Position numbers and translations under genes: made by a program
Shown: positions 15,587-38,031 of the stretch, in pieces
Layout: each line of letters starts with the position of its first letter
Numbering within the stretch: position 1 is the stretch's first letter
Notes under the pieces: model-generated
The model's input: only the letters and a program-made list of their open reading frames with translations
The model's database searches: none
Told to the model about the DNA's origin: nothing
Virus record (IMG/VR): IMGVR_UViG_3300044644_001125
Span: 62,001-126,000 of that record
Strand: one strand, 5' to 3'
DNA: 64,000 nt

Positions 15587-16020
15587 GATGTTTACTCCGT
15601 AGTGCTTTGTTAAGGTGGGTATATTCTAAAAGATAATTAAACTATTGTCAACCTCTAAATTCATATACGCGTATACACGTATAGGCGTGTATACTCACAG
15701 CGGGTACTGGTAGACTTCACGCCTACCAGCTCCCTCGGATTGGTTAACTATCGCTGTTGATGTATACCCATTCAGCGTATAACTCTTCTATTGTTGTGCC
15801 GTACTTCAATTCTAGTTTTTCTTCTTTGTTTAGTTTTTTCGCATACTCTTCGATTGTTTTGATTTCAGTTGGCACTGCGTATATTTTACCTTGGAATTCA
15901 ACAGATGTAGGTTTATTAGAATTGTCGTAGTGTAGGATTGGTTTCATTGTCTTGTTTCCTGTAGTGCTGTTTAGTGAGGTTATAGTCTAATGGATTATAA
16001 CCTCACTGTCAAATTTATTT

Positions 16021-16368
16021 TTAATCTAGTCTACTGCAAGCATAAGCGTCGATACCGTTATCGCGTAAGACTTTGGCGTATGCTTGTGCGCCTGCTTCGA
16101 GTGTATCCACGTTTTGAACGTGAAGTCTGCTAGGATTCCATAACTCAAAGCATTTTGAGGTATAACCTTTATCGAATCCTAGACTTTCCAATTGTTTACC
16201 TAGTTTGCTATTGGCACGAATGCGTTGTTCAATGCGAACCCAAGCGAAACCGCAGGCGAATCTATCAACACCACCTAGTTTGTTGATAAAGTATTCGCGT
16301 GCCGCAGTTTCAGCGGCTAATGATGCTTGTGTGTGGATTGCTGTTAAGTCTAAAGTTGTAGTAGTCAT
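16021..16368 (-). CDS. Early hypothetical protein
   Basis: CGFAWV...SRLD phage-type small protein; cassette promoter. Confidence 0.75.
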   Translation of the reverse strand: MTTTTLDLTAIHTQASLAAETAAREYFINKLGGVDRFACGFAWVRIEQRIRANSKLGKQLESLGFDKGYTSKCFELWNPSRLHVQNVDTLEAGAQAYAKVLRDNGIDAYACSRLD

Positions 16369-17024
16369 TTTAAATGTCCTGTAGTGCTGTTGTTTAGTGA
16401 GGTTATAGTCTAATGGATTATAACCTCGATGTCAAATTATTTTTATTCGAAAGATAAAGCAATCGTAATACCGTTTTTGGTAGCTTTGCCAGCAGTGCGT
16501 ACTTTGCTTTGTAATTGCATTGCTTGTGCTGTTTGGCTTGCTGTATAGCCACCACCGCAGACTTGTAGGCAGACTGCCGCGAGTGCATCGATTGGGTGTT
16601 GTGTTTTGAAGTTAGGTTTTTTAGTAACTGTGATGTAGGTTGTCATTGCTTTGTTTCCTGTAGTGCTTTGTTAAGGTGGTGATAGTTTAGTTGATAACTA
16701 TCACCTTGTCAACCATTATCTTTTAATTAAGTTTATAGTAATGTTCCACGGCTAACCCATTACCAGCACCGCAATCGAATAATTCGGTACGGCATGATAG
16801 TACATTATCTTTGAGTAATTCGTGAAACGCGGCGGTTATTTGCTTATCTAATTGAACCCATTTATTGAAATCAGTTCTGAATGCGTGATGATATTCTGCT
16901 AAAGTCCAGCAGAATTTTGACGCAGATACTTCTGTTTGTTTGGTTAATGCGTCAATGATTAGTGCTTTCATGGTGTTTACTCCGTAGTGCTTGTTAAGTT
17001 GGGTATAGTCTAAAAGATAATCGT

Positions 17025-17291
17025 TTAGCTGTCAACACTTTTATTTTGTCGTTCACGGCTTGCCATAGCCATCAGTGAGAAGTTGCTACATTTATCTTCC
17101 CAGCGTAGTAAATCCGCCACTGCGTAGCGTATGTGTTCTTTTTTGTACACTCTAATTTCTTGGTTTACCGCACCATTAGCAAATACTCTAACGTTCCAAC
17201 CTTTACCGATTCGTCTAACGGTGATTTCATGATGACACCAACCTAGACCTATTCGAGCTGGTGTTATGATTTGTTCTAATTTTATTTTCAT
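17025..17291 (-). CDS. Early hypothetical protein
   Basis: Cassette promoter and SD. Confidence 0.7.
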   Translation of the reverse strand: MKIKLEQIITPARIGLGWCHHEITVRRIGKGWNVRVFANGAVNQEIRVYKKEHIRYAVADLLRWEDKCSNFSLMAMASRERQNKSVDS

Positions 17292-17424
17292 AATGTTTAC
17301 TCCGTAGTGATGTTAAGTTGGGTACATTATAAAGGCGAATGTACCTAATGTCAACTCTATTTTTGCCTATACGTGCGTATATGGGTATAATGCGCGTATA
17401 GGCTTGCGTACTCACAGCGGGTAC

Positions 17425-17637
17425 TCAGTATCTGTGACGTCTTGCGTATCGTCTTTTATCGTAGTAGCCTCTGCGATAGTCGCCATATCGATAATGCGGG
17501 ACATAGTTATACTCTTTGAGGTATACTGGATGGCCCGGAATGTAGGTGGTGTCTGTTTCATAGATTGGATAGGTTGCCTCATAGACAGGGCCAGCAGTAC
17601 AACCAGTGAGCAATAAGATTAAGATATATTTTAGCAT
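17425..17637 (-). CDS. Small putative lipoprotein
   Basis: MLKYILILLLTGC lipobox. Confidence 0.55.
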   Translation of the reverse strand: MLKYILILLLTGCTAGPVYEATYPIYETDTTYIPGHPVYLKEYNYVPHYRYGDYRRGYYDKRRYARRHRY

Positions 17638-17904
17638 GATAGTCTGATGTGGTCGATGGTTTCGTGGACTGTTAAGGTTTCAGTAATTAAGTTAATCACG
17701 GTGCCGTTTTCCAGTGGTTTAAGTGATACGATGTATTTTGTGTTAATATAGATCGTTTCGTGTTGTTCGTTGGTAACTGGTAGTAGCATAAGGATCCTTT
17801 TGATTATGGCTCGTCACTAACGTGACTCGCTAGGTTATATGTGTATGTATATGTGTATAATTACCCGCGTGAATGGCGTACACTCACAGCGGGTAATGTG
17901 GATT

Positions 17905-18327
17905 CTAAAGTAAATCGTGGATATGGTAGCAATTTTGGTAGAAGTAAGGTAGTTTAGTTTTACCTACTGATTCGTTTTCTACACGAAACTCGTAGAAGTA
18001 ATCGTCATAATCGTCTGTGTTAGATTCTTTAGTTGGTTCGTACTCCCAGAATGTCACGATGCCGCTACCAGATACGGTTAGGTAGTTTGCCCATGATGGT
18101 GCTGGTGAGTCGGTTATATCGGCTAGTGCTAGTGGCAATTCGATGACTGTTGGTTTGGTCACAGGTGTGAATGATTCGCCTAGATACGTTGAACTTGACA
18201 TACTGAACACGTCATCACTGATAATCCATGTTTCACCGTAGTGTGCATTGACTTGATTGTCTTTGATGCTAATGAATAACGCGCCAGTTGGGATTGTGCT
18301 TGTGTCGATTACTTCGTATGCTTTCAT
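17905..18327 (-). CDS. Early hypothetical protein
   Basis: Cassette promoter and SD. Confidence 0.7.
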   Translation of the reverse strand: MKAYEVIDTSTIPTGALFISIKDNQVNAHYGETWIISDDVFSMSSSTYLGESFTPVTKPTVIELPLALADITDSPAPSWANYLTVSGSGIVTFWEYEPTKESNTDDYDDYFYEFRVENESVGKTKLPYFYQNCYHIHDLL

Positions 18328-18408
18328 GGTCTTTGCTCCGGTAGTGCTTGTTAAGTTGGGTATAGTTTAATCGTAAATTGACGAACTGTCAAGCATTATC
18401 TTTTAGAA

Positions 18409-18540
18409 AAAGAAAAACCTAACAGAGCACTACTTCTGTTAGGTTGTTTCAGTGGTGGTATACTAGGGTCACTACTCCCACATTGACCACCTTGTTACTG
18501 GGCGTTGGTTAGGTTTCCATGCCCAGTGGATTTGCACTAC
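18409..18540 (-). ncRNA. Candidate sRNA/3'-UTR RNA with AGUAGUG loops ending in a terminator
   Basis: Hairpin 18416-18445 (loop AGTAGTGC, U-tail); hairpin 18454-18491 (loop AGTAGTGA); further GTAGTGC at 18534-18540. Confidence 0.55.
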
Positions 18541-18987
18541 ACTTTGAATTTTGGGTTTGTTTTGCCAATGGTTGCCGCGCTTAGTAGCTGGATTGTTTTG
18601 TTGTCGAATCCGAGCTGTTTGGCTAGGTCTTTGACTGTTTCTTTTGGTTTAGTGGGTTTGTTCATTTGGCAGTGCCTATTTGTGTTTTAAGGGGTGTACA
18701 AGGCTCGCGCGTTGCGCTCGCGAGCCTAATGTTTATAAACCTTTTAATAACTGGTTTACTACTGGTTTTAAATCGTCTTGTAGGTTATCTAGTTCTAATT
18801 GGTATTCTAAACTTTCGCTGTATTGTTCTAAATCTCTTACTACATAGTCAAGTAATCTCATTCTACCTTCTAGGGTTAGGACTTCGTACATATCAATGGT
18901 AATTGGACTGTAGTTACTCATGGGTAGTGCCTCTTTGTTTTGTTAAGGTGGTGCTATTCTAAAAGATAATTAACGCACTGTCAAGTA

Positions 18988-19599
18988 TTATCTTTTAGTT
19001 AGAATCAATCTAATGTCTTTCTTTTCTGGGGTATAAGCCCAAACTCGTTGGTCGAAGTCGTAGTCTTCTTCACCGTGGTGTAGTTTAACATTGGTTTCTA
19101 GTATGGTGTTAGTTGCAATGTCTACGATGTCTACTTGGTATTCTTCTAGGTTGCTAAACATTTTCCAAAGTTTTCTCGCGCCATAGTATTGTTCTTCGCC
19201 ACCCATTAGCGTATAACCTGCGTCAATTAGGCTCATATAGCTACCTGATGCAATGCCACGTCCATATTGGTTATCGACAACCTTGACTGCTTTAACGCTT
19301 AGTATGTTACTATAGTGTTCAAAGTTTGGCATTTTTTCAAGGCTAATTTCACCAGATACTTTAAACTTATCCTTTATAGTTTTGTAGTTCTTATCGATGT
19401 CTTCAGCAAAGAACCCGACAACAAACTCATAAGAGTTGTTTAGTTGATAGCGTTCCATTACGCTATCAGTCGTGTTTACAGTTCCAACAAAGGTATATTT
19501 GCTTTTCATTACACCCATTGTTATATCTGAATAGGCTAGTTGGGTATTCCATTCACCGTATCGTGCGATTGACATTTCTGTTAAGTCTTTTATTCTCAT
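18988..19599 (-). CDS. GNAT-like acetyltransferase
   Basis: VKVVDNQYGRGIA acetyl-CoA motif, ARKLW; N-terminus MRIKDLTE. Confidence 0.6.
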   Translation of the reverse strand: MRIKDLTEMSIARYGEWNTQLAYSDITMGVMKSKYTFVGTVNTTDSVMERYQLNNSYEFVVGFFAEDIDKNYKTIKDKFKVSGEISLEKMPNFEHYSNILSVKAVKVVDNQYGRGIASGSYMSLIDAGYTLMGGEEQYYGARKLWKMFSNLEEYQVDIVDIATNTILETNVKLHHGEEDYDFDQRVWAYTPEKKDIRLILTKR

Positions 19600-20924
19600 G
19601 GTCGTTCTCTTGGTTACAAGGCTCGCCTACGGCTCGCAAGCCTTGTATTGAGTTATCTTTTAGTTATCTATCGCCAACTGCTTCGTTATGTAGTTGTTTA
19701 ATGCGTTCGTCTGTTTCGATGGCAAAGTAACTTTGTAAAATGCTTTTTAAGTATCCAACGTCTTCTAAACAGGTATCTAGTGCATCATCGACTAATTCGT
19801 CTATTAGTTGTTCAATATTCATGGGTAGTGCCTCTTTGTTTTGTTAAGGTGCGAGTAGTATATAACTACTCGCTGGGTTTGTCAATTGTTTTTTATTGGT
19901 CTTCTAGCATTAAGTCTTCAAGGTTTGTAACTAAGCCGTCAAAGTCTTCATCTGGGCCGAGTGTACTTGCGTAGAAGAAGACTGTTTCGCGGTCGATGCC
20001 GAAGTCATCTGCTAGGTTGTTCAAGTAGTCTTTGCGGTTTTTGTAACCTTCTTCAGTGTAAATGCTCATAGGTAGTGCCTCTTTGGTTATCTTGTAGCGG
20101 TATTGCTACAAGGTGGTTATATTCTAAAAGATAATTGATTTACTGTCAACTGTTTTATTGTACTGGTTTGCCATTTTCGTCATAGATACCAGTACGGTTG
20201 TGCATTTCGTCATAGTTGTCTAGGCATTCATTGATTTTGTCGTTGTTGCCTTTGTAGAGTGTTTTACAGAAACCCACTTGATAGCCTACTGTTGGTTCTA
20301 CTGCTCTATAGATAAAGTAAGCACTTGTTAAGGTGATTACTGATAATATGATTGATGTTATGATTTCTTTCATTGTTTTTCTCTGTTCGGTTAAGGTGGT
20401 GATAGTTTAATCGTTTATCACCACCGTGTCAAATCTTTTTTATGCGAAGTCTTTAACTAATTCTACTTCGGTTGCGTATGGGAAGAACTGCTCGAATAAC
20501 TCGTTTGCTTTGGTCGATGACTCTGCGTTGATTACCAAGGTTTCTTCAGTGCCGTACATACCAATGTAGTGGTATTGATATGGGAATAGTTCTTTCATTT
20601 GTAGTGCCTCTTGGTTTTGTTAAGGTGGGTACAGTATAGTTGTTCTGTACCCAGTTGTCAACTATTATTTTGATTGGCAGGTTGCCGCGTATCCGATTAA
20701 ACCTTCTTCTAGTGCGTGGTTTAATGCTGGTGTAATTTGTGCTTTGTAGGTTTCGCATTCAGCAGTGGTTGTGAAGTTACGCGCCACATTAGTTGGTGTG
20801 TCGTTGTTCATGTCAACTGGTGTGAAGTAAAGTGATACGAGTAAGATAATCATTTTGTTTGTCCTGTAGTGCTTTGTTAAGGTGGGTACATTGTATTCTC
20901 AATGTACCCAGTTGTCAACTCTTT

Positions 20925-21119
20925 TTATCCTATTGCTTGCACTAAGTATGCGTAGGTGATTTCTTTCTTCGTGCCTTTTGGTAATCCTAGTAGCTGGCAA
21001 GCTACTGTGTTTGCTGATTTTCCACGACCTTTCAATCCTTTGATTTCTAATCCAAGTGCTGATTTCAAGGTTAATAATTGGAATCTGCTGATTTGTTCTG
21101 GTGTAGTTAATGCGCTCAT
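20925..21119 (-). CDS. Small early protein (copy 1)
   Basis: Near-identical to 38032-38226. Confidence 0.8.
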   Translation of the reverse strand: MSALTTPEQISRFQLLTLKSALGLEIKGLKGRGKSANTVACQLLGLPKGTKKEITYAYLVQAIG

Positions 21120-22088
21120 CTTTGTATCTCCGGTAGTGCTTTGTTAAGGTGGGTATAGTTTAGTCGTTTATGCCTACATTGTCAACAACTTTCGTTAAAC
21201 AATCTACAGGATAATAACAACAGTCGCCAAAAGATACTGAATACGAGTACCACGTAGTCATTACACCGTCTATGAGGTTATTCCATTCGCTTTGCTTGGT
21301 ATTGACTACGTCACCAATGATAGGCTTTGAACCTCCTAAGTCTAGGCTAAGTGTTAAGCCTATCACTGAGTTGATGTCTGTTTTCATGCGATCTAGTACG
21401 TTCATGGTTTGTCCTTTGACAGCTCGCGCTAACGCGCTCGCATAATATAATCTTTAGTCTGCTGGTTTAACATGGATTATGTTTATATCACTACCGTGTT
21501 TATAATGTGCCATCTTTCTTGCGTTTTCTGCATCTGATATAGTAATATAGTCATACTGGGTAATGGTACGTTTAGTGAAGTTGTAATCGTACTTCTCGAA
21601 GTAGACTTCAAACTGGGTTAGTCCATCGGTTCTTCTACACATGGGTTGCCTCTATGTTGGATAGATAGTTGTGCCGTAGACTTCTACGGGTTCGAGTAGA
21701 ATAGTATCATACTCGACTGTCACTGTCAATAAGGCGACCAGTACTATTATTGCGATTGATTGTAGTATAATTATAGTTCGCATTGCTTATCTCTTGAACA
21801 GGTAATAACCGACAGCTAACATGACTAGGTATCCCGCGCCACCACTGCCAATGATTCCAGCAGTGCCAAAGATAAGCAATCCAACCATAACAAACCAGAA
21901 AGCAACCTTAATGAATAAGGTTAGCACTGTTGCGAATATAGATAGCATTATCAATGCAAAAATGATAGTGGCGGCTAGTTCGGGTGCGTTTTCCATTGGT
22001 TGCTCTCGTATGTGCGTATAGGTGTGTTATGTCACAGCGGGTAAAGAGGCTAAAAGATGATTGAGTTATCTTTTAGCCTTGTTGATAT

Positions 22089-22391
22089 TTACCCTTGTAG
22101 TTCTTCTAGGGTAACTCTGGTTACTCGTTCAATGATGAGTTGGTCTGGTGTAACCGCAGTGAGTTCGAGATACCAAGCGTCAAAATCTTCATCCTGTGTA
22201 AACGTTTTAACTGTTACTTCATCGGTATCTGAATCAAACTCGAATTCATCAACTAGGTGTGGGTATCCCTCGTGTTCTACTTTGATTTGAAAACCTGTGT
22301 TAAGGTTATAATACGTTACGGTTTCTTGCCATTCTGCTTGATTGGCTGTTAATACGTTTACTGCTGTTAATGCGTCTAGGTATGCTTTCAT
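22089..22391 (-). CDS. Early acidic hypothetical protein
   Basis: Cassette promoter and SD. Confidence 0.7.
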   Translation of the reverse strand: MKAYLDALTAVNVLTANQAEWQETVTYYNLNTGFQIKVEHEGYPHLVDEFEFDSDTDEVTVKTFTQDEDFDAWYLELTAVTPDQLIIERVTRVTLEELQG

Positions 22392-22461
22392 CTTGTTTAC
22401 TCCGGTAGTGCTTTGTTAAGGTGGTGATAGTTTATTTGAAAACTATCACCGTGTCAAGTTG

Positions 22462-23388
22462 TTAGTGTAATATTTTTGAACCTTTGGTTCTGTTACATCT
22501 CCAACATAATGTTTGTAAGTTACTTTCTACAGTAAAACCGCCTTTCGATAATGGTATAATATGGTCGATTTCTAATAGTAGATTCTTTTCATCATTAGTT
22601 GATAGATTACACATTTGGCAAGTATGGCTATCTCTGTTCTTTATCTTAGTTCTAAGTGCCGATGTCATCAATGCGCGTTGTCCAGCGATACTCTTTTTGA
22701 ATTTGATGTTATCATTCAAGTAAGCAATAAATCTGTTTAAGTTTGATATATCGAATTGAATGTCATTTTTCATAAAACTGTTACCACCAGCCGACACGTA
22801 TTGAAACGAATAAACTGGAAAATACAACTCGCTCAAGTCAACATAATTCAAACCCAACTTCTGTTTCAACAATTCTGAATCAAAACGCATAATCAATGGT
22901 GGTATGCAATTTGATATACTTGCAATAATCTCATCTCTTTCAGTGGTTAGTAATCTTTTACCCTCTTGAACCGACCCGTAATCATTTAACATACTTTCAA
23001 AGTTCGATAATGCGTCTTCATCAATTCCAATATTGAAATACTTACACAGGTACTTGAATGGTTGATTGTTTGAGTTTTTCAGCACAGAAGACGAACAGCG
23101 ATGAACAAATGTATTACTTTTTCTGATATTTGCCCAGTTTGGTCTTTTGAAATTATAATTGCTACTATCACGCAACGTACTTACACCCATATTGTTAGCT
23201 GGTATATGAACGTGAGATTGTTTTAACTTCTCTATGTACTCGTTTAATTCGTTGCAATTGTTAACATGATAATATACGGTATCGCGTATATTCAAGAAAA
23301 TCTGACTTTTAAAATATCTATTTCTATATACTACATATACAATCCACATCACACATAACAATCCAATCACAGCAATTGCCAATTTCAT
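22462..23388 (-). CDS. Membrane-anchored HNH endonuclease
   Basis: N-terminal TM helix; RD..TCQMC, EIDHIIP, NLQTLCWRCN. Confidence 0.85.
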   Translation of the reverse strand: MKLAIAVIGLLCVMWIVYVVYRNRYFKSQIFLNIRDTVYYHVNNCNELNEYIEKLKQSHVHIPANNMGVSTLRDSSNYNFKRPNWANIRKSNTFVHRCSSSVLKNSNNQPFKYLCKYFNIGIDEDALSNFESMLNDYGSVQEGKRLLTTERDEIIASISNCIPPLIMRFDSELLKQKLGLNYVDLSELYFPVYSFQYVSAGGNSFMKNDIQFDISNLNRFIAYLNDNIKFKKSIAGQRALMTSALRTKIKNRDSHTCQMCNLSTNDEKNLLLEIDHIIPLSKGGFTVESNLQTLCWRCNRTKGSKILH

Positions 23389-23461
23389 CTTGTTTACTCC
23401 GTAGTGCTTTGTTAAGGTGGGTACATTATAGTTGCAATGTACCCAGTTGTCAAGTTATCTT

Positions 23462-23788
23462 TTAGATGAGTTCACCATCTTCGTCAAATTCTGAATCAAA
23501 GTCAACGACTTTGTATTCGTCATCTGCTGGTATTTCAGTAACAACATAGTTCAAACGGTCACAGTAATGCCAACCACTTAAGATTGGGTTGTTGCCATAG
23601 CACATAATTGTCCAAACACGTTTAGGGTCTGTTACTTTCATCTGGTTGATATATTCTTCTTCCTCACCGTATGTTTCGTATGAGATGCCACCAAAGCTCG
23701 CAAATTCTACATCTTCATCTTCTGGTAAGAAGTGGTTGATTTGTGGTTTGAATTGTTCTTCGAATTGTTCCCAAGATATTGTTTTCAT
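23462..23788 (-). CDS. Early hypothetical protein
   Basis: Cassette promoter and SD. Confidence 0.75.
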   Translation of the reverse strand: MKTISWEQFEEQFKPQINHFLPEDEDVEFASFGGISYETYGEEEEYINQMKVTDPKRVWTIMCYGNNPILSGWHYCDRLNYVVTEIPADDEYKVVDFDSEFDEDGELI

Positions 23789-24679
23789 GTTTTGTTACTC
23801 CGTAGTGCTTTGTTAAGGTGGGTACAGTATAGTTGTTCTGTACCCAGTTGTCAACGATTATCTTTTAGGTTATAGTTCTAGTATGAGTTCGTTATTATCG
23901 TACTTAGACTTCCAAACCAGTTTTGCGGTGTACATATTAACGTCTAGTTCTGGTTCAAGCCATGTTAGTTCACTGTTTGACATATCGAATACATCGTCAA
24001 CTTCTTCCGATGCAAGGAAAGTTCCAGTGGGAATGATCGACCAATAAGTAACTTGGTTGATGTCATTACTTGATATAATCTCACGACCTTTCTCGATTTT
24101 TTCATTAAGAAAGTCTAAGTTGCCATAGTAAAACAACGGTGTGTCTGAGTATTCTTCGGTGGTTGAAAGTTCGTATAGTTTCATTGTAGTGCCTCGTTGT
24201 TGTTTAAAGTGGGTGTATTCTAAAAGATAACTGCTTTACTGTCAAGTGTTATATACTAATGGAATTGGTCTAATACCTAGTTGTTTTCTCATTAGAATCG
24301 CAATATCTTCTGTTTTTCTTACAAGCACTTTACCCTTTTTATTAAGAAGATTCGTTGATGCAACAATTCTGTTGTTGACTACATAAAACGTGTTTATTTT
24401 ATGCTCGGTGCGTGCATGAATATTGAATGCTATTATCTCGTACCCAGCATCTATTTTGTAAGCGTACACACTAGGTGGGCATACCAGTTCTTTTGTCAAA
24501 AGTCCAGTAGCAACTCTTTTATCTAGTATTGCTATAATTCTGCTTGATTCTTTCTTTAACCATCTTTGTTTAATTTTACCTTTTTTCATCTTGTTTACTC
24601 CGTAGTGCTTTGTTAAGGTGGGTATATTCTAAAAGATAACTGCCTCAAAGTCAACAGTTATCTTTTAGGTTAATCTAGG

Positions 24680-24979: not shown

Positions 24980-25321
24980 TGCTGTTTTCCTGTAGTGCTT
25001 TGTTAAGGTGCGAGTAGTATATAACTACTCGCTTTATATGTCAACAGTTTATCTCAAATGTTCTTCTAGTAATTTCAACTGTTTTTTAGATAGGTTAAGT
25101 TCAGCTAATACGTTTCTAAAAGATGATGTAAGATAACCTGTAACAAAGGCATAGTTCACCTCTCCTTTGTTAAAATCTGCCGATGCTTGTTCTGCTGTTG
25201 TTTTCATATGGTCGATTACTGTTTCTAATAGGATTGGGTTTGTCATCGTCTTTACTCCGGTAGTGCTTGTTAAGGTGGGTACAGTATAGTTGTTCTGTAC
25301 CCATTTGTCAACAGTTATCTT

Positions 25322-27834: not shown

Positions 27835-27855
27835 TGTCTTTACCTTTATGTTTGT

Positions 27856-28709: not shown

Positions 28710-30209
28710 GATTTTTACTCCGTAGTGCTTTGTTAAGGTGGGTACATTCTAGTTTAAAATGCACCCAAAGTCAAGCATTATCTTTTAGATATATTCACGT
28801 CCTGTTTCTTCAATCAACGCAGGTGTGAACCAATCACGGTATCTGGTGGCATTCTCACGACCAGCACCCCAGCCAAAATCTTCTACCCAGTATAACTGTT
28901 CACCATCAAACTCATCTATCTTACCTAAGATAACAAACTGTTTACCAAATACGTCATCATCACTAAAGCCTTGATTGGCTACTGCATCATCTTGAATGAA
29001 GTCTAAGAAGTGTGCCAAACCCATTGCGTGGTCTGAACCATTGTTCAGTAACCATTCTTTTTGTTCTCTAAGTAACGCCCAGTCTATGTTTTTAAGTGTA
29101 ATCATTTTCTATTCTCCGTAGTGCTTTGTTAAAGTGGCTCTAGTATCTCATATAAGAACCACCTTGTCAACTTTAATATTCTTCGTGTGTGATAATTCTT
29201 TCTACATCGTCTGGGACTGTTTCAATCGTATAATCTAAGATTTCTTCATCACCAGTCAATCTTTCGTTGATTTCTTCGGGTAACCAGTAGTCTAGTTTGT
29301 GGTCATCGTTTACTGTCAATAAGAATGTTACTTTTACTGTTTTCATTTGTAGTGCCTCTTTAGATTGTTTGATATATTTCTCGCTGTACTGTTTCTTCGT
29401 ATGCGTCTGCGCAGTCCTCTTGATTTGCATCGCATTCGCTACACGCTAATTGTGATTTCGGTCTGACGTAATTGTCATTGCATTCACATTCCCAATAAGA
29501 ATGGTTTAGCGTAATCAAACCGTAGTTTTCAATCACATCACCTTGTGCGTTTGTGTCTAACATGGTTATTGCTCCGTAGTGCTTTGTTGAGGTGGGTACA
29601 TTCTAAAAGATGATGTACCCAAAGTCAAGCATTATCTTTTAGTCAAACGCTTTGACTATTGAATCAATAAGATTGTCCATATATTCCACCACTTCACTGA
29701 TAGTATCATCTTCAAATTTTTCCCATATCGTAGCATAATCAATACAGTCAAAACTATCTGCTAATTCATTTGATAACATTTCATACGTTTTAACGGCATC
29801 ATTATCATATTCAGATAAGAATGTGTTAATTGCGATTTCAATTGCTTTTTCTTTTGTAGTCATGTCTATTACTCCGTAGTGCTTTGTTAAGGTGCGAGTA
29901 GTTTAATCTATCTCACACCAGTTGTCAACTATTATCTTTTAGTTTGCGGTTAACAAATCTAAAAATTCTTGGTATGGAATCATTACTTCAAATCCCATGT
30001 TGTTATCATAAACTACCCATGTTGAATTTTTAGATGACAGGCTTATGAACTTAATGAGTGCCGTGTTTAGTATTACTAATGTTTCATGCGTTGCAGTTGA
30101 ACCGCGTAGTTTTTCTGTTTTAGTTGCTTTAATGAACATGGTCTTTACTCCGTAGTGCTTTGTTAAGGTGCGAGTAGTATATTACTACTCGCTTTAGTTG
30201 TCAACTGTT

Positions 30210-30710
30210 TTATATAATCATTGTTTTTGGTATTCTGTAAACAATACCACTTGCAACACCTAATAGCGGTTTAACGCTTACCACTTTCACTACTGCGACA
30301 TATGAATTCCTCAACTGGATAATGTCACCAATCATCAAGTTAGCGGCACGTTTGCGTGTTTTACTAGCATTTTCGTGAAACTTAACTACATTATCGCGCC
30401 ATTCTTGGCAAGTAACTGTTGCCTCTTTTAAAAACTTTAGTGGGCAGTTATATTGATAAGGGTGCATACTTTCACACATATCTTTGTAACCATAGCCTTT
30501 ATCGTTTTTAAAGTATTCAAGTCTGAATAGCAGAATAACCTTTTGACCTAACACATTGTTAGGATTATAATCAACGTCTTTTTGTGATACTGTGTACAAA
30601 CCCCATAGGTTATTGCCAACCAACGACCATTGAGTTATTGCATCATTGTCTAATTTAATTTGTCTAACTAATGCTTGTTTGCCAGTGTTGCTATAAGATA
30701 ACCAACCCAT
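30210..30710 (-). CDS. Conserved phage early protein (GYKDMCESMHP type)
   Basis: MGW..., GYKDM.E.M.P..Y.CP..., EWR motifs. Confidence 0.7.
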   Translation of the reverse strand: MGWLSYSNTGKQALVRQIKLDNDAITQWSLVGNNLWGLYTVSQKDVDYNPNNVLGQKVILLFRLEYFKNDKGYGYKDMCESMHPYQYNCPLKFLKEATVTCQEWRDNVVKFHENASKTRKRAANLMIGDIIQLRNSYVAVVKVVSVKPLLGVASGIVYRIPKTMII

Positions 30711-30789
30711 TGTCTTTACTCCGTAGTGCTTTGTTAAGGTGGGTACAGTATAGTTGTTCTGTACCCAGTTGTCAACTCTTTTTTTTCAA

Positions 30790-30901
30790 CTATCAGTAAG
30801 TAAGTCTACCATTATTAAGATTTAACGTATTAACGAAAAATGTACTGGCTCAAGCCTTGTATTGGGTGCTTGAGGACACCCGCAGACCCACTTACTGATA
30901 G
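30790..30901 (-). ncRNA. Candidate structured ncRNA in a cassette slot
   Basis: 20-bp closing stem (30790-30809 with 30882-30901, G-U on minus strand) and inner CTCAAGC/GCTTGAG hairpin; promoter at about 30935-30972 with no SD or ORF. Confidence 0.55.
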
Positions 30902-31658
30902 CTCTTAGGCTCGTGCCTATCGGCACTCGCTAAGTTGGGTACATTATCTTTTAGAATGTACCCATTGTCAAGTATTATTTTAAACTACCTTACCTACGAA
31001 AACGTAATTATGTCTACTCATATCAGCTAGATTACCAATCGAGTTAATCCAAAAAGGATCTGTATTTTGTGAATCAAGTATAACCTTATTGGCAACTTCT
31101 TCTAGGTGGTGTACCTTGTTTACTTGAGTTTTACCTAGTAAGATACTATTGTCTAAATTATCTTTTAGTGCTTTAGCCACTTGCGCTAAGTCACTTTCGT
31201 GTCTGGTAAAACTACCAGCAATGGATATTGGGTTTATGTTCATATTAGCACCTATCACTTTGATGTGGCAAACAATGCCGTAAATGCCCACAGCATACTC
31301 TTAATGCCGCGCCATTGAGCGGCGCGTATTGCTGTAATAGATACTGTGGTGACCTGTGTTCTTCGTATGGTGGTGGCATCATTACTGTTGGTGACATTTG
31401 GCAACCATACAAAGAAACTAAAAGTATATAGGCTATTTTACGCATGACTGAGTACCTAACAAAACAAAACCGAAACAGATTAACCCAAAGCCAACTGCTA
31501 TTGCAATAATTGCCGTTAACCACTGGCTAGTCATTAAACCTAAGTCACCAATCGAACCTAGTGCCATACCTGTTGCGATTGAAGTCATCGCTTTACTTAA
31601 ATTTGTCATAGAGTGCCTCGTGTGCGTAGGTGTACCCGCCTTCACAGCGGGTAATCTG

Positions 31659-32162
31659 TTAGTGTCTTGTTGCTGGCTTGATACCAAAGATGGTATACAT
31701 CCGTTCATCAAACTTATCTAAGATAACGTCTGGTAGGATTTCCATAAGTTCATCTATGATTTCTGCCTTGAGTTGTTCAACATCAATCATTTCAACTTCG
31801 GTTTGTTTAGTTGTAAACTCGTTCTCTTGGCTTAATTGCAAGAGTACCGTTTCAAGGTTATGCAATGTTTTATCCTGTCGAGTGGCAACTTCCCAAAAAC
31901 CAATTCGATTATAGATAAAGATATAATCAGCATTAGTTTCATCTAAAAGATGATTGAGTGTCTTGTGTATCTCACTTTCATCTAGGTCACCAGTATCATC
32001 CGTTATTTCTGCTCTATCTCCTATCAACATCAATTTAGAGATGTTACTTTGGTCGATGTTAGCTAAAAGATAACGTCCAACATCTTTTAGAGTTCCTTCG
32101 TGGATATAGACGGATTCAACGACACCACCTTCTCTTACCCATGCAACTGTACTACTAGGCAT
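31659..32162 (-). CDS. Diverged paralog of 25992-26402
   Basis: SVYIHEGTLKDVGRYL, LMLIGD, DYIFIY pattern. Confidence 0.6.
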   Translation of the reverse strand: MPSSTVAWVREGGVVESVYIHEGTLKDVGRYLLANIDQSNISKLMLIGDRAEITDDTGDLDESEIHKTLNHLLDETNADYIFIYNRIGFWEVATRQDKTLHNLETVLLQLSQENEFTTKQTEVEMIDVEQLKAEIIDELMEILPDVILDKFDERMYTIFGIKPATRH

Positions 32163-33738
32163 TTTCTACCTCTCTTGCGATTATATCTGCTATTGTTTCG
32201 TCAGTGGCTTTATAGATAAGCCAGTTACCAATCTGTACCTTATGCTTTGCGTTCATGTACTTTAAACCAAAGTTACCCTCAAAGATTCGTTGTTTAGCGG
32301 CTGGGATGATGATAACATCCTCGCCAATGTACAAGTGGGTTCTGTCGGTATTATCAGTCAACAACGCCTTAAAGGTTGTTTCACTGGTATGGTTATCAAC
32401 GTACTGTTGGAACAAATCCGCCATTGGACTTGTTACTACTTCTTCAAACTTCATGTTATCGTTCCTTGTTAGCTCACCGCTAACGCGGTTCGCACGTTAA
32501 CGGTGAAGTTGTTAGTTAAGCTGGGTTAAGTATCTGTAATCCGTAGATTAAATCTTCGTCTGTAATCTCATCGTATGAGAGTATGTATTGTTCGCCATCA
32601 TCAACTGTATGTACATGAATCATCTTATCCTCTGGTGATAAGCCATCAATCACATAATCAACGTCATCTTTTACAATTAAGAATGCTTGTTCGATTAAGG
32701 TATTAAGTTGTTCTCTTGTTCTCATTGGTAGTGCCTCTTTGTTAGTGTAGTGGTATGGTATCAATTATCTTTTAGGTTGTCAACTTATTTCTTACTGTCC
32801 ATTAAGTCTTGCATACCGTCTAAGTGGTAGATTCGATTCTTATGGAATACAAACCCACCTATGTTTGTAAAGTAAATTTTGCAGTAGTTAGTTGCAATGT
32901 CTTTTTGGAAGTGGGTGAATACTGCAATACCCGCAATCAACGCGCCAATCGCAATACCACTAACAAATGCTCTTAATCCCCTAAAGTTATCTGATACTTC
33001 TACTAATCTTGGTTTCTGTTCGTAAGTTGCCATCTGTAGTGCCTCTTTGTTAAGTTGTGGCTATTCTAAAAGATAATCGAACTGCTGTCAACAACTTTCT
33101 GTAACAAGGTTCTCATGTCTTGGCATTCGCTGTCATCTTCTTCTGAAAACTCATAACCAAACGCAATAATATATTCTAAGGCAGTTTTAATCAAGTCTAC
33201 TTCATTTGCGTCAAAGTTCATGTTACTGTACTCTATAGTTATGTTTAAGGTCAATGTCTGGTGTCAATGGCATTGGTTTAGCTTTCGTATCAGTTCTTGG
33301 TAAGTGGATTTGTTTATGGTTAACGATAACATACTCTACCGTAAACTTATCTGGGCAAATCTGATACAAGGTTTCACCACTGCAATGTACATGGTCATAG
33401 AATCCTGTTTCATCTGGGAAGTCTGGTACATCAATAACCGCGTGTGCATTGGTGGTAAAAATGGCTAGTGCTAGTAGTAATTTCTTCATTGTCTTTTCTC
33501 GATTGTTGCTATTGTTCCAACTAAGTTTTGTGCAAATGTTGCTTTGAATTCTTGGTTATTCAGTGAAGTTGTTTTAACCCATTCATCGATAAAGTAACTT
33601 ACTGGTGTTAACTTTCTTACTTGGGACTTAGCCACTCCTGTATGGGTTGCTAAGGTTTGTTCTATTGTGGTCATGTCGCTATCCTCTGTTAAGTTGCAGG
33701 TATCTTACCCTAAAATACCTGCATTTGTCAACAACTCG

Positions 33739-34197
33739 TTAGTAAAATTCCGGCATGAATTCTTCTTCAAAGTCATCGATAAAATCGAGTTCATTAAAGT
33801 CATTATCTGCAAACTGTTCCATGTCTACATCACTTGGTGTATAATTGCCTTTCTTTGCCGCTACATAGCTTGTAACTCTATCAACCAGTCTTTCCATTGG
33901 CTTGTCTAAGTTCTTCCCAGTGACGGTGCCTGTGTTGCATTCTAACTTGATGTCAAATAACACATCCGCCAAGCCTACTGAATATTTAATGTCGCAATCG
34001 AATAAGAAGTTTACCGCGCCACTGGTGTTAGATTTTAAACCGTTTTGATAGTAATCATAGTATACGCGTCCAATGGCTCTCATCATCTCACCTTCAACAC
34101 TTCCAGCATTACCTGCTTTTGGTACGATTTCTTTTAATGCGTTATATTCGTTTTGCATTTTGCCTAGATTGTTCCAGTATATGTTTTTCATTTTCAT
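33739..34197 (-). CDS. Conserved phage early protein
   Basis: YWN..GK.Q, GEMMRA...YYDYYQNG. Confidence 0.7.
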   Translation of the reverse strand: MKMKNIYWNNLGKMQNEYNALKEIVPKAGNAGSVEGEMMRAIGRVYYDYYQNGLKSNTSGAVNFLFDCDIKYSVGLADVLFDIKLECNTGTVTGKNLDKPMERLVDRVTSYVAAKKGNYTPSDVDMEQFADNDFNELDFIDDFEEEFMPEFY

Positions 34198-35573
34198 TTA
34201 CTCCGTAGTGCTTGTTAAGGTGGTGATAGTTTAATTGGAAACTATCACCGTGTCAAGTTATCTTTTAGTCTTCAGATTCTCTGCGGTCTAATTCAATGGC
34301 TAGTAACTCTTGCATAACTTCAGTAAAGGCATCTCTTGATTCTAATTCTGAATACAACTCAAACTTGAGTTCCAGTTCATCGTATGTCATTTCACTGATT
34401 TGGTTTTTGATTTCATTTATGTTCATTGGTAGTGCCTCTGGGTTGGTTAGGTTAGGCTCGCGCGTTGCGCTCGCGAGCCATGTATGTTGTTTAGATGATA
34501 CAATCGTTATCTGCATCAATTTCCAATGTTACGCATTCGGTGGAAATATCGTCACCATTATCAATCCATGCCAATCCAACACGATTTTTATCTATTGTGA
34601 ATTGTTCATCTGCGTATGCAACCGATACCACTACCGGTAAGTCTGCATCGAATGTGGATAATACTGCAATTAGTTCTTTGATTGTCATTATCTTTACTCC
34701 GTAGTGCTTGTTAAGGTGGTGATAGTTTAATTGGAAACTATCACCTTGTCAAGTTATCTTTTAGGTTAGGCTCGCGCGTTGCGCTCGCAAGCCTTGTATG
34801 TTTAGGTTGACACCTACTTGATTAGAGTAGTTAGAAGGTGCAGTTTCCTTCCATGCCAAGTATCACTTGCACTGCACCCTTATGTCATTATCTTTTAGGT
34901 TATTGGTCTTCGTATGCTCTGGCTAGTAACTCTGCCGTTTTAAAGATATGGTGAACTCTATCATCTTTTAGTGCGATTTCAAGAGCCTCCTCGTCATCAA
35001 TCGAGAAGTCATTGTCAAAGTGTTCTACCATGTACTCCTCGAAACTATCTGCCTCAGATTCTAGCAAGTAGTCTAAGATACTAGACAAACGGTTTAAGTT
35101 GGTTTCTGTTAAGGTGATTGTTCTGTATTGTTCGCTCATTGTCTATTACTCCGTAGTGCTTTGTTAAGGTGCGAGTAGTATATTACTACTCGCTAAGTTT
35201 GTCAACTTCTATTCATGGTACATTTTACCGTTAAATTCTACTGCTTGTGGTTCATCGTCAGAATCTGCCCAATCAGTCCAGTAAATCGCGTCATCCGCGT
35301 AAGCATCTTCGTAAGTGGCATATCCAGCCGCAATACTCCATTCAACTGCATCTTTGATATTCTTAAAGTATTGGTCTGCCTCGCTGGTAACCCATCCTGC
35401 GTTCATACCTTCACCAGTGATTGAACAAACTCGCATCCAAGTTTTAAATTCTGTAGTCATTGTCTTTACTCCGTAGTGCTTTGTTAAGGTGCGAGTAGTA
35501 TATTACTACTCGCTTTAAATGTCAACTATTTTTTTCTTCGTACTGGCTCGTGCCTATCGGCACTCGCAGAAAT

Positions 35574-35867
35574 TTAATCGATGGTTCTAACTGCTCTGAC
35601 GTATCCGTCACCGTAACTCTTACCGTAGTAACTCTGAATCCCGATTGACATATGATTACTCCATGCGTTGACATCATTATACTCAGTAGATGACCAGTAG
35701 TAATCTTCCTCAAACTCATTTTCCGATTCATAAATCTGCGTTAGTTCGTCTGTGGTTGGTAAACGCCATCCTGTTTTCTCGTTGATATTAAGCGAAAAGC
35801 AGTATTGGCTGGCATCATACCAGTTGGCTTGAATCTCTGTTTCTTTTGGTGCGATTTCAATGTTCAT
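35574..35867 (-). CDS. Mini DUF1566/C-lectin-fold protein
   Basis: W.DA..YC...GWRLPT..EL...YWSSTE...VRAVR. Confidence 0.8.
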   Translation of the reverse strand: MNIEIAPKETEIQANWYDASQYCFSLNINEKTGWRLPTTDELTQIYESENEFEEDYYWSSTEYNDVNAWSNHMSIGIQSYYGKSYGDGYVRAVRTID

Positions 35868-35941
35868 ATCTTTTACTCCGTAGTGCTTGTTAAGGTGGGT
35901 ACATTCTAGTTGAAATATACCCAGTTGTCAACTATTTGTTT

Positions 35942-36202
35942 TTAGATTATTCTGGTTTGTTTTATTACTGCACATTCGATTCTATCTGCTGAAATTTCTT
36001 CACCAAACTCGCCATCCGTGCCTTTGAATAGTACAGTGCTACCAGCTACTTCAACTAAAGCAACCTCGACCACTTCGCCACAATCTTTAACATATATTTG
36101 ATAGTCTTTGGCAACCTCGTAATCGATTGAATCCGCATAATCCGAGTATTCTACCAAGTATGGCATGATTTCAGCTAAGGTGGTTTCTGTCATTGTGTAC
36201 AT
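35942..36202 (-). CDS. Early protein (paralog A)
   Basis: MYTMTETT...IECAV shared with 36916-37179. Confidence 0.75.
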   Translation of the reverse strand: MYTMTETTLAEIMPYLVEYSDYADSIDYEVAKDYQIYVKDCGEVVEVALVEVAGSTVLFKGTDGEFGEEISADRIECAVIKQTRII

Positions 36203-36915
36203 GGATATTCTCCGTAGTGCTTTGTTAAGGTGGGTATATTCTAGTTGAAATATACCCAGTTGTCAAGTTATCTTTTAGGTTAAATCGTGTTCTAATTTAG
36301 GGTATGTTGCGCGTAAGGTTTCAATCTTTGCTATTAAGGCAGTTATATCTGCTACTATCTCGTCCCTAGCAGTGACTTCACTCTCTGTCAGTGACTTTAA
36401 GTAATCAGTGTCATAGATGTCAAACATAGCTTTAATGTCACGTCTGTATGACTGTACCATGCTATAAAGGTCTGACCGTTTTTGAATGCCGTTCCAGTAT
36501 AAACTACTCATTGGCTTTACTCCGTAGTGCTTTGATAAGGTGGTGATAGTTTAATTGAAAACTATCACATTGTCAATCTTTTTTACCCGTGAGTTAGTTC
36601 TGCCTCAGCATCTTCTAGTGCATCAGCGACTTCTTCTTTAAAGTTGATATTATGACAATCACAGTAACGAATAATATCTACTAACAAATCTGCTACGGTT
36701 GTTTCATAACCATAATCTTCTAATTTTAATATTGCCGCAATCTTTTCAACACCAGTGTAAAAAGAAAACTTTTTAAATACTTCTTCTCCTTCTGGCATTT
36801 CCTGTAGTTCTGCTAACACAAGTTTAATCGAATTGTTCATGTTGTTTACTCCGTAGTGCTTTGTTAAGGTGGGTATATTCTAGTTGAAATATACCCAGTT
36901 GTCAACTATTTGTTT

Positions 36916-37179
36916 TTAGATTAGTCTGTTTTGTTTCATTACAGCGCATTCAATACTATTGACTTTGGCAGTACCGCATTTACCACCACCAATGTTTCTG
37001 AATGTCACGCTATCACCTAAGACTTCTACTGTTCCTACTTCTACCACATCACCAAACTCTTTTACATAGAGTTGAATATGACGTGCTGGTTCGTATTGGA
37101 AGAATCCATTGTCCTCCTCGTCAAACAATTCCAAGTAAGGTAATAAATCAGCAAAGGTGGTTTCTGTCATTGTGTACAT
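36916..37179 (-). CDS. Early protein (paralog B)
   Basis: Paralog of 35942-36202. Confidence 0.75.
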   Translation of the reverse strand: MYTMTETTFADLLPYLELFDEEDNGFFQYEPARHIQLYVKEFGDVVEVGTVEVLGDSVTFRNIGGGKCGTAKVNSIECAVMKQNRLI

Positions 37180-37246
37180 GGATATTCTCCGTAGTGCTTT
37201 GTTAAGGTGGGTACATTCTAAAAGAAAATACCCACCATGTCAATCT

Positions 37247-37960
37247 TTATTTTGTGCGAATAACGAATCCGCTAGTATCTTTTTTCGCGCGTCCTTTGGC
37301 TTTCAATCCAATAACCAAGTCTAGGTTAGTATTATTGAATCTTAAGTCATCCAAGTCACCATCAACTACAGGAACACCATTCCAAGTGGCGGGTACTTCA
37401 TCGAATACCACTGCAATAGAGTAACCTTGTTCCAATGCTTTCATTACGTCTGCATCGTTTGATTCTGCTCTACTGAATGTTAAATGGTAGTTACCTAGGT
37501 GCTTAACCTTACGATTAAGAATCTTACTGTAGTCGTAGAATTGTACTGTAGGGAAGTGTTCAAACACGTTCTTACCACCAACGTAAATGTTTTCCCATAG
37601 AATGTCACTTGTACCATTTAAACGGAATACAGGTGTCATACCTTTACGCTCTGCTTGTTTAATGGCTTTTGTTATATCAGTGATTAAGGTTTCCATGAAA
37701 ACCTCTCTGTTTGTTTTAAAGAACACGGTTCTACGTTTACGAGCCTCTTGTACCGCGTTAGTGGTTTCACCTGCTTTAAACATACCACCATGTCCAGCAG
37801 TATTCAAACAAGCCGCTCTGCATCCAGCAGTAGCCTTTGGGCAAGTGTTCATTACACCAGATAAGTCACTTGGTGCTAGGTGAAGAATGTAGGATTTATA
37901 ACCTTGTGATTCACCTTTAATGATTTTAAGGTTTGAAGTAGTGAGAAGTGAAAATGCCAT
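37247..37960 (-). CDS. Gp88-like Fe-S protein
   Basis: CPKATAGCRAACL, RLNGTSD, QFYDYSK, YHLTFS, GDLDDLRF, GLKAKG. Confidence 0.75.
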   Translation of the reverse strand: MAFSLLTTSNLKIIKGESQGYKSYILHLAPSDLSGVMNTCPKATAGCRAACLNTAGHGGMFKAGETTNAVQEARKRRTVFFKTNREVFMETLITDITKAIKQAERKGMTPVFRLNGTSDILWENIYVGGKNVFEHFPTVQFYDYSKILNRKVKHLGNYHLTFSRAESNDADVMKALEQGYSIAVVFDEVPATWNGVPVVDGDLDDLRFNNTNLDLVIGLKAKGRAKKDTSGFVIRTK

Positions 37961-38031
37961 TGTAGTAACTCCGTAGTGCTTTGTTAAGGTGGGTACATTG
38001 TATTCTCAATGTACCCATTTGTCAAATCTTT

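What the first reader, a model, noticed from the sequence alone, without database searches (positions are those of the whole stretch)
15970..38030. Each early promoter embeds a co-varying palindrome straddling the -10 box
Seen: the arms change together while pairing is kept. Examples are GGGTACAG..CTGTACCC (near 20627, 23820, 30740), GGTGATAG..CTATCACC (near 16678, 22423, 34222), GCGAGTAG..CTACTCGC (near 19850, 30170, 35171), GAGGTTATA..TATAACCTC (near 15976, 16399) and GGGTACATTG..CAATGTACCC (near 20884, 37991). One arm lies in the -35/-10 spacer, so it cannot fold in that promoter's own mRNA, and there is no U-tract. Inference: it acts either as a DNA cruciform/ssDNA hairpin that gates the promoter or serves as a recombination substrate, or as a processing hairpin in read-through RNA that frees monocistronic mRNAs.
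Basis: partly seen in the sequence, partly recalled or inferred. Interest (0 to 1): 0.7.

Follow-up and report, generated by a model that had tools for sequence, protein, structure and literature searches.

The report
Promoter–hairpin gene cassettes in jumbo phage
The co-varying palindromes are real. They belong to about 50 repeated promoter-plus-hairpin cassettes of a kind already described in T4-like phages as PeSLs, here in an uncultured lake jumbo phage, where they bound the small genes that natural strains gain, lose and reshuffle.

Summary
Window 13.9-39.1 kb (minus strand) carries 51 near-identical cassettes. Each has an A-rich stretch, TTGACA, a 17-nt spacer, TAnAnT, a 6-nt discriminator, a conserved leader (ACCTTAACAAAGCACTACGGAG) and an ATG.

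- **Cassette types:** 34 cassettes (32 of 42 in the stated range) have a perfect 7-13 bp inverted repeat. Its 5' arm is in the spacer. Its 3' arm covers the end of the -10 box plus the discriminator and ends at about -1 to +6.
- **Other cassettes:** 4 have a different inverted repeat around the -35 box, and 13 have none.
- **Covariation:** The arms co-vary far beyond permutation controls. They fall into at least 12 stem families in four registers. At least six changes are compensatory on both sides, some of them between strains.

The same geometry is found in RB49 PeSLs (promoter-early stem-loops, Arbiol 2010; Comeau 2014) when scanned with the same script. As with PeSLs, the cassettes precede unrelated ORFans. 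They also hold 34 of 38 indel junction ends among natural strains.

The best reading is a PeSL-type cassette. It combines a sigma70-type promoter with a hairpin that exists only in read-through RNA and acts as an attenuator or 3'-end protector. The conserved flanks serve as recombination homology. The hairpin's mechanism is not shown here.

This is a new member of a known kind, of moderate interest.

The parts
13893..39145 (-). Array of 51 promoter cassettes, one in front of almost every small ORF (a hyperplastic, ORFan-rich region)
   Evidence: nhmmer with the cassette profile places 46 of 50 genome hits here.
20656..20661 (-). -35 hexamer TTGACA of the example cassette w20661
20633..20638 (-). 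-10 hexamer TATACT of cassette w20661, 17 nt after the -35 box
20599..20626 (-). Conserved leader from the predicted start (A of ACCTTAAC) to the base before the ATG at 20598, with the SD. The start site is inferred, not mapped.
20626..20653 (-). Stem TGGGTACAG/CTGTACCCA, loop 10. Same stem at 23819-23846, 25276-25303 and 30740-30767.
   Evidence: -13.4 kcal/mol, z -4.0
20883..20910 (-). Stem TGGGTACATTG/CAATGTACCCA, loop 6. Also at 37990-38017, and at 23418-23445 with one G.T pair.
   Evidence: z -5.8
36231..36258 (-). Stem TGGGTATATT/AATATACCCA, which is C:G to T:A relative to the previous family. Also at 36870-36897, and at 35896-35923 with T.G.
16678..16705 (-). Stem GGTGATAGTT/AACTATCACC. 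Also at 22423-22450, 34222-34249, 34718-34745 and 36543-36568.
   Evidence: z -6.6
19851..19873 (-). Stem GCGAGTAGT/ACTACTCGC, loop 3-5. Also at 25010-25032, 30170-30192, 35171-35193 and 35491-35513. The orthologous cassette in strain G001 has GCGGGTAG/CTACCCGC.
   Evidence: z -7.6
15973..16007 (-). Stem AGTGAGGTTATA/TATAACCTCACT. A shorter copy lies at 16399-16427.
   Evidence: z -6.3
20395..20425 (-). Stem GGTGGTGATA/TATCACCACC. Relatives lie at 25948-25984 (13 bp) and 28278-28312. In strain G001 this core is replaced by a GGGTACATT-type core between identical flanks.
26430..26460 (-). Stem GGTGGGTAT/ATACCCACC, loop 13. Wobble-containing relatives lie at 37206-37236 and 38339-38371.
   Evidence: z -5.4
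33695..33723 (-). Stem TGCAGGTA../..TACCTGCA in a promoter with an 18-nt spacer
29891..29919 (-). Stem GGTGTGAG/CTCGCACC with one T.G pair. Other strains carry GGTGTGAG/CTCACACC and GGTGCGAG/CTCGCACC, which gives a full compensatory path.
15249..15282 (-). Stem CTTGGTGTGTA/TATGCACCAAG in a promoter with a 16-nt spacer
24629..24668 (-). Second kind of inverted repeat: CTAAAAGATAACTG upstream of the -35 box, paired with CAGTTATCTTTTAG ending in the -10 box. 12-bp versions lie at 18959-18998, 27943-27982 and 39106-39145. Its arms are copies of a genome-wide 11-mer.
18416..18445 (-). Canonical hairpin plus T-run terminator just upstream of the stemless cassette w18392
27494..27514 (-). Canonical hairpin plus T-run terminator just upstream of cassette w27475

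Best explanation
The region is a hyperplastic early-gene array of an uncultured freshwater jumbo phage. The phage is 327 kb with 38% GC and a gp23-type capsid. Its nearest cultured relatives are the PA5oct, Atu_ph07 and Phosso phages.

The array is built from about 50 copies of a composite cassette of the PeSL (promoter-early stem-loop) kind. Each cassette supplies three things.

(a) A near-consensus sigma70-type promoter with an optimised leader and SD, so that each ORFan is expressed on its own.

(b) An intrastrand hairpin written into the only free letters of the promoter, the spacer and the discriminator. It lies wholly upstream of the cassette's own predicted start. It therefore exists only in RNA that arrives from upstream promoters. 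There it most likely attenuates or terminates read-through, protects the 3' end of the upstream message, or both.

(c) Conserved flanks (the A-rich stretch with the -35 box, and the 26-nt leader) that serve as homology for recombination. This lets gene-plus-cassette units be deleted, inserted, swapped and reordered.

Shown here: the anatomy, the selection for pairing, the identity of geometry with RB49 PeSLs, the association with unrelated ORFans, and the cassette-bounded indels in natural strains.

Inferred: early timing, the start site, and what the hairpin does in RNA.
For: - Anatomy and copy number.
- Pairing beyond chance.
- Pairing in four registers (column sums 43, 45, 46, 48) with loops of 3-13 nt. 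No fixed dyad exists, which fits a hairpin and not a dimeric protein site.
- Compensatory changes: GCGAGTAG/CTACTCGC to GCGGGTAG/CTACCCGC at an orthologous cassette; GGGTACAG to GGGTATAG; GGGTACATT to GGGTATATT; GGTGATAGTT to GGTGATAGTA; and GGTGTGAG/CTCACACC to the T.G form to GGTGCGAG/CTCGCACC.
- Independent occurrences of the same design at three unrelated promoters elsewhere in the genome, in IMG/VR contig L046 and in RB49.
- RB49 PeSLs scanned with the same script give GGGGGTA/TACCCCC, GGGAGTA/TACTCCC and ATGCGGT/ACCGCAT. The 5' arm is in the spacer and the 3' arm ends 6-8 nt after the -10 box. They also have a conserved leader.
[quoted passage not shown] A cloned stem-loop lowered lacZ expression as much as rrnB T1. 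Recombination between PeSLs gives mini-circles (PMC2839356; PMC4122927).
- Cassettes precede unrelated genes. There are only 3 paralogous pairs among about 50 genes, and cassette type does not follow paralogy. Most of these genes have no family match.
- Breakpoints fall in cassettes: 15 of 18 and 34 of 38.
- Cassettes without an embedded stem have stronger structure in the 58 nt upstream: median -11.4 against -6.7 kcal/mol, one-sided Mann-Whitney p=0.010. Two of them are preceded by canonical terminators. This suggests a hairpin is wanted somewhere before the start site.
Against: - No U-tract follows the embedded hairpins. The phage does use canonical hairpin-plus-T-run terminators elsewhere, so strong intrinsic termination at the embedded stems is doubtful.
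- A terminator whose 3' arm ends at the next start site cannot protect that promoter from occlusion.
- The stems are almost all perfect Watson-Crick. There is no clear excess of G.U over A.C: 4 against 0 in single-mismatch stems, and 4 against 14 in flanking pairs. No RNA-specific signature was found.
- The RNA data available (assembled contigs of lake metatranscriptomes) break at the repeats and give no 5' or 3' ends.
- Breakpoints in cassettes are partly expected, because the cassettes are the intergenic DNA.
- 13 of 51 cassettes have no embedded stem, and chimeric cassettes with broken stems exist. The stem is therefore dispensable at least in the short term.
Confidence: 0.6

Rival explanations
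1. The hairpin acts on DNA. It forms in single-stranded DNA during replication or recombination and marks or stimulates cassette exchange, being cut or stalled at. This would make the array work like an integron whose attC-like sites have conserved structure and variable sequence.
For: - The stems are perfect Watson-Crick, with very few wobble pairs.
- Gene-plus-cassette units are gained, lost and reordered between strains.
- Chimeric cassettes imply crossovers between the two arms.
- In RB49 one mini-circle crossover mapped to the loop (PMC2839356).
Against: - Ordinary homologous recombination through the conserved leader and the -35 flank explains the same junctions.
- No recombinase or structure-specific nuclease was linked to the array. 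The Endonuclease_7 search found nothing, though its control also failed.
- Stemless cassettes bound indels just as well.
Confidence: 0.15
2. The pairing is kept by mutation and not by function. Template switching within quasi-palindromes during replication repairs one arm from the other. Gene conversion among cassettes then spreads whole cores.
For: - The stems are perfect with almost no intermediates.
- Whole cores are swapped between identical flanks.
- The same core sits before unrelated genes.
Against: - It does not explain why at least 12 different palindromes arose at this one position.
- It does not explain why the same design recurs at unrelated promoters and in unrelated phages.
- It does not explain why stemless cassettes carry compensating upstream hairpins.
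Confidence: 0.1
3. A cruciform, or a protein bound to the palindrome (an operator), gates the promoter and switches early transcription off or on.
For: The palindrome overlaps the -10 box and the start site, where repressors usually act. The position of the 3' arm is constant.
Against: - The half-site sequences differ between families, and the centre of symmetry shifts across four registers with loops of 3-13 nt. This does not fit one dimeric protein.
- Arms of 7-13 bp with such loops are poor cruciform formers by established knowledge of cruciform extrusion. This was not tested here.
- A quarter of the cassettes and about 100 other consensus promoter-like sites lack the stem.
Confidence: 0.07

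Closest known systems
PeSLs (promoter-early stem-loops) of T4-like phages: RB49/phi1, T4/PST and KVP40/nt-1 (Arbiol et al. 2010, PMC2839356; Comeau et al. 2014, PMC4122927)
   Same: - Same parts: a repeated cassette of about 100 bp with an A/T-rich stretch, a near-consensus sigma70 promoter, a stem-loop inside or over the promoter, an SD and a start codon.
- Same setting: it sits between small ORFans in hyperplastic regions and bounds indels between close relatives.
- Same geometry: one RB49 class has exactly the geometry seen here, and its arms also differ between copies while still pairing.
   Different: - The host phage is a 327-kb jumbo phage of the PA5oct/Atu_ph07/Phosso group. It is not a member of Straboviridae.
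- There are more copies in one block (51 in 25 kb).
- The stem sequences are more diverse (at least 12 families, against the G-run/C-run type of RB49), and the leader is much more conserved.
- The cultured relatives PA5oct and Vibrio phage 2.275.O have no such array.
- Promoter, terminator and mini-circle activities were not tested here.
Intrinsic (Rho-independent) terminators
   Same: A stable hairpin of 7-13 bp (-13 to -20 kcal/mol) directly after a gene, in the sense strand.
   Different: There is no U-tract after the stem. The scan flags none of the embedded stems on the coding strand, whereas true hairpin-plus-T-run sites exist at 18416-18445 and 27494-27514.
Integron attC sites and gene cassettes
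   Same: Promoter-less or small ORF units are bounded by imperfect palindromes whose structure, not sequence, is conserved. Units are excised and inserted, with circles reported for PeSLs.
   Different: No integrase was found. Each unit carries its own promoter. The conserved flanks allow plain homologous exchange. attC has extrahelical bases and a fixed R/L box layout that are absent here.
Hairpin promoters of phage N4 virion RNA polymerase
   Same: A short hairpin at the promoter whose structure matters more than most of its sequence.
   Different: N4 promoters are 5-7 bp stems with 3-nt loops, read by a phage polymerase on extruded single strands, and there are three per genome. Here a full sigma70 -35/-10 pair is present and the stem is optional.

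Membership tests
PeSL cassette | Near-consensus sigma70-type -35 and -10 boxes with about 17 nt spacing | tested here: met
   TTGACA or TTGACT, 16-18 nt (17 in nearly all), then TAnAnT in all 51 cassettes
PeSL cassette | A/T-rich stretch upstream of the -35 box, and an SD plus start codon at the 3' end, all within a repeated intergenic motif of about 100 bp | tested here: met
   The conserved leader ACCTTAACAAAGCACTACGGAG is followed by an ATG about 30 nt after the predicted start.
PeSL cassette | [quoted passage not shown] | tested here: met
   34 cassettes have a stem over the -10 box and 4 have one around the -35 box. The same script on RB49 finds stems of 7-9 bp in the same geometry.
PeSL cassette | Preferential location in hyperplastic regions next to ORFans | tested here: met
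   46 of 50 profile hits lie in one 30-kb block. Stems occur in 33 of 54 sites in the array against 3 of 103 elsewhere. The genes are mostly without family matches and unrelated to one another.
PeSL cassette | Association with insertions, deletions and replacements between closely related phages | tested here: met
   15 of 18 breakpoints and 34 of 38 junction ends lie in cassettes. The caveat is that the cassettes are the intergenic DNA.
PeSL cassette | Measured promoter activity, read-through reduction by the stem-loop, and mini-circles | not testable with these tools
   The phage is uncultured. Only assembled RNA and DNA contigs were available. 'Goes back' joints exist in DNA runs but cannot be told apart from other gene orders.
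PeSL cassette | Host phage is a T4-like myovirus | tested here: inconclusive
   A gp23-family capsid protein is present. The nearest relatives are jumbo phages of other families, at 68-72% capsid identity.
Intrinsic terminator | G+C-rich hairpin followed within 0-2 nt by a U-rich tract | tested here: not met
   The stems are followed by ACCTTAAC. No embedded stem is flagged on the coding strand, and terminator-like sites are not enriched (16 against 14.3 in shuffles).
Operator for a dimeric DNA-binding protein | Conserved half-site sequence at a fixed spacing about one dyad | tested here: not met
   There are at least 12 half-site families, four registers, and loops of 3-13 nt.
Integron attC | A tyrosine recombinase, conserved R and L boxes, and extrahelical bases in the folded strand | not tested
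   No recombinase search was made. The stems are perfect, without bulges.

The most novel reading that the evidence does not exclude
The hairpin is not a passive attenuator. It is a structure-specific DNA or RNA signal tied to the promoter it sits in. One form of this is a recombination site recognised as folded single-stranded DNA, which would make the array an integrase-free, integron-like cassette exchanger. The other form is a U-tract-independent stop. In that case the -10 element in the loop pauses sigma-bearing read-through polymerase just as the stem closes, and the polymerase is handed over to the next promoter.
Probability: 0.12. Interest if true: 0.75.

Novelty: new member of a known kind. 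Interest (0 to 1): 0.4.

Why it matters
It extends promoter/stem-loop shuffling cassettes from cultured T4-like coliphages and vibriophages to an uncultured freshwater jumbo phage of another lineage. It is an unusually clean case, with about 50 copies, many stem families and many natural strain variants.

This set could settle what the PeSL stem actually does, whether RNA attenuator, 3'-end protector or recombination signal. That question is still open even for RB49.

It also shows how jumbo phages can turn over accessory early genes as plug-and-play units.

Tried and rejected
- **Nucleotide matches to cultured phages.** Near-identity search against cultured phages gave nothing.
- **RNA evidence.** Only four lake metatranscriptome runs hold the region, and only as assembled contigs. 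The contigs end at the repeated cassettes in DNA runs too (for example at 20887), so their ends say nothing about start sites or 3' ends. Joints between cassettes could be other strains' gene orders. The second read-laying run was not used, because contigs cannot answer the question.
- **One consensus structure.** A single structure on a fixed-column alignment works poorly, with 43-52% of cells paired and slid controls equally high. The stems use four registers, so a register-free permutation test was used instead.
- **G.U against A.C asymmetry** as a test of RNA against DNA. There are too few imperfect pairs to decide.
- **The degenerate cassette pattern in IMG/VR.** This gave mostly single chance hits. 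Only one close strain (G001), one fragment and one unrelated contig (L046) were useful.
- **Cultured relatives.** PA5oct and Vibrio phage 2.275.O have no comparable promoter array, so their published data cannot be borrowed.
- **Pfam searches** for RegB and endonuclease VII in the genome found nothing. The control genomes did not ring either, so absence is not shown.
- **Paralogous gene duplication** as the source of cassette families was rejected.
- **The inverted repeat around the -35 box** was first taken as a second hairpin class. Its arms turned out to be copies of an 11-mer present 169 times in the genome, so its hairpin reading is uncertain.

Full report
**What is there.**
The window is bases 62001-126000 of a single 327,256-bp contig with 38.1% GC. 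The contig is held almost completely by lake-water metagenome runs. It encodes a gp23-family major capsid protein. That protein is 68-72% identical to those of Sinorhizobium phage Phosso, Vibrio phage 2.275.O and Pseudomonas phage PA5oct. Its DnaB-like helicase is about 50% identical to those of PA5oct and Atu_ph07. It is therefore an uncultured freshwater jumbo myovirus.

Genes between about 12 and 56 kb of the window lie on the minus strand. Read on that strand, almost every small ORF between 13.9 and 39.1 kb is preceded by the same cassette:
- an A-rich stretch that often holds the upstream stop codon;
- TTGACA, a 17-nt spacer and TAnAnT;
- a 6-nt discriminator and the leader ACCTTAACAAAGCACTACGGAG;
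- an ATG about 30 nt after the predicted start.

A profile of the cassette finds 50 copies in the genome, 46 of them in this block. I count 51 cassettes in the array.

**The palindromes.**
In 34 cassettes a perfect inverted repeat of 7-13 bp links the spacer to the bases from the last 2-4 nt of the -10 box through the discriminator. It ends 5-12 nt after the -10 box, most often 6-7 nt, which is at about -1 to +6 of the predicted start.

The promoter's own transcript therefore lacks the 5' arm. Only RNA arriving from upstream, or single-stranded DNA, can fold.

Seven tested hairpins fold at -13.4 to -20.1 kcal/mol with z-scores of -4.0 to -7.7. Three stemless cassettes score near zero. No T-run follows the stems.

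Four cassettes carry instead a 12-14 bp A/T-rich inverted repeat around the -35 box, and 13 have neither. Outside the array only 3 of 103 consensus promoter-like sites have such a stem. "Each early promoter" is therefore too strong.

**Is the covariation more than descent?**
- *Permutation.* Dealing the 3' arms out among cassettes gives 6.3 stems of 8 or more on average, with a maximum of 14, against 27 observed. With variants from a close strain and 25 metagenome contigs, 59 of 105 distinct cores pair, against a mean of 14 and a maximum of 22.
- *Diversity.* There are at least 12 stem families in four registers. On a gap-free alignment the paired columns sum to 43, 45, 46 or 48. This is why any single consensus structure does poorly and the slid controls peak at the other registers.
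- *Compensatory steps.* Several pairs of stems differ by exactly one base pair changed on both sides. One such change lies at an orthologous cassette of two strains (A:T to G:C in the GCGAGTAG stem). Another forms a complete path from T:A through T.G to C:G across three strains.
- *Not gene duplication.* Only three paralogous pairs exist among about 50 genes. Paralogues carry different stems, and identical cores precede unrelated genes.
- *Convergence.* The same design occurs with unrelated sequences at three other promoters of this genome, in an unrelated IMG/VR contig (L046) and in RB49.

I conclude that pairing itself is maintained.

**What it is.**
The architecture matches the PeSLs described for RB49/phi1 and later for T4/PST and KVP40/nt-1. 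[quoted passage not shown] They also carry an SD and a start codon. They are concentrated in hyperplastic regions next to ORFans and lie at indels between close relatives (PMC2839356; PMC4122927).

I ran my own script on RB49. One class has the stem wholly in the spacer. The other has the 5' arm in the spacer and a 3' arm made of the end of the -10 box plus the discriminator, ending 6-8 nt after the -10 box. Its arms differ between copies while still pairing, and it has a conserved leader. That is the geometry seen here.

The other defining features were also met:
- The array genes are mostly without family matches.
- Against a strain 88-98% identical (G001, L015), 15 of 18 synteny breakpoints lie in cassettes, which cover 20% of the region.
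- In metagenome contigs, 19 distinct deletions, replacements and reorderings have 34 of 38 ends in cassettes.
- Orthologous positions can carry a different core between identical flanks, and chimeric cassettes with mismatched arms exist.

**How it probably works.**
The promoter and leader parts need no special pleading. For the hairpin, the strongest constraint from anatomy is that it is always placed before the start site, whatever its register or class. Cassettes without an embedded stem tend to have a stronger hairpin in the 58 nt upstream (median -11.4 against -6.7 kcal/mol, p=0.010). These include two canonical terminators.

This points to an action on transcripts arriving from upstream. 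It agrees with the lacZ result reported for an RB49 stem-loop.

Three things argue against a simple terminator:
- There is no U-tract, in a phage that does use canonical terminators.
- The stem cannot shield the promoter it sits in.
- The stems carry no RNA-type wobble signature.

Attenuation, pausing or 3'-end protection after cleavage in the unstructured leader therefore all remain open. So does a DNA-level role in recombination. Cruciform gating and a protein operator fit poorly with the shifting dyad, the variable loops and the many stemless promoters.

**Verdict.**
The read-through-RNA half is plausible but unproven, and the cruciform idea is not supported.

Noticed in passing
Whole genome. 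In the window, for example 18959-18969, 24629-24639, 27943-27953 and 39106-39116 (minus strand). Plus-strand copies lie just upstream of many -35 boxes.: The 11-mer TTATCTTTTAG occurs 169 times in the 327-kb genome on both strands, where about 0.6 is expected, and 271 times with up to 1 mismatch. It lies mostly outside ORFs. It appears singly, in tandem clusters, or as inverted pairs, most often 16-18 nt apart. It sits inside or beside sigma70-like promoters all over the genome and 8-45 nt before many start codons. It shows no strand preference relative to genes. No paper in the library mentions it. It may be a regulator site or a phage-specific signal.
   Followed up: partly
Window 38334, 35567, 30930, 17830, 42778 and 46817 (minus); 44849 and 46154 (plus). 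About 39 copies in the genome.: A second repeated intergenic element has the form GCGAG, a 4-bp stem, a GNTA loop, the stem again, then CGAGC. The four inner pairs co-vary: TGCC/GGCA, CACC/GGTG, CTCC/GGAG, CGCC/GGCG and AGCC/GGCT. It often lies just upstream of promoters.
   Followed up: no
Window 27856-27931 (minus) and cassette w27968: The only tRNA gene in the window (tRNA-Met, CAT) begins 2 nt after the predicted start of a cassette promoter that has no leader. The cassette promoter is therefore also used to drive a tRNA.
   Followed up: no
Window 22462-23388 (minus): An HNH endonuclease ORF with its own cassette is missing from other strains. It is skipped in an RNA-run contig, in metagenome contig L098 and in strain G001. 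This is as expected for a mobile homing endonuclease gene.
   Followed up: partly
L046 (IMGVR_UViG_3300036715_001196), positions 5885-7520: An unrelated viral contig also has a run of consensus promoters with a conserved leader. Several of them have stems that straddle the -10 box, with quite different sequences.
   Followed up: no
Window 20000-26000 in DNA runs X3 and X5: Contigs join cassettes 'backwards', for example 25033 to 20000, 25045 to 20617 and 20655 to 20427. This could be other gene orders, tandem duplications or circular forms, and contigs cannot tell which.
   Followed up: no
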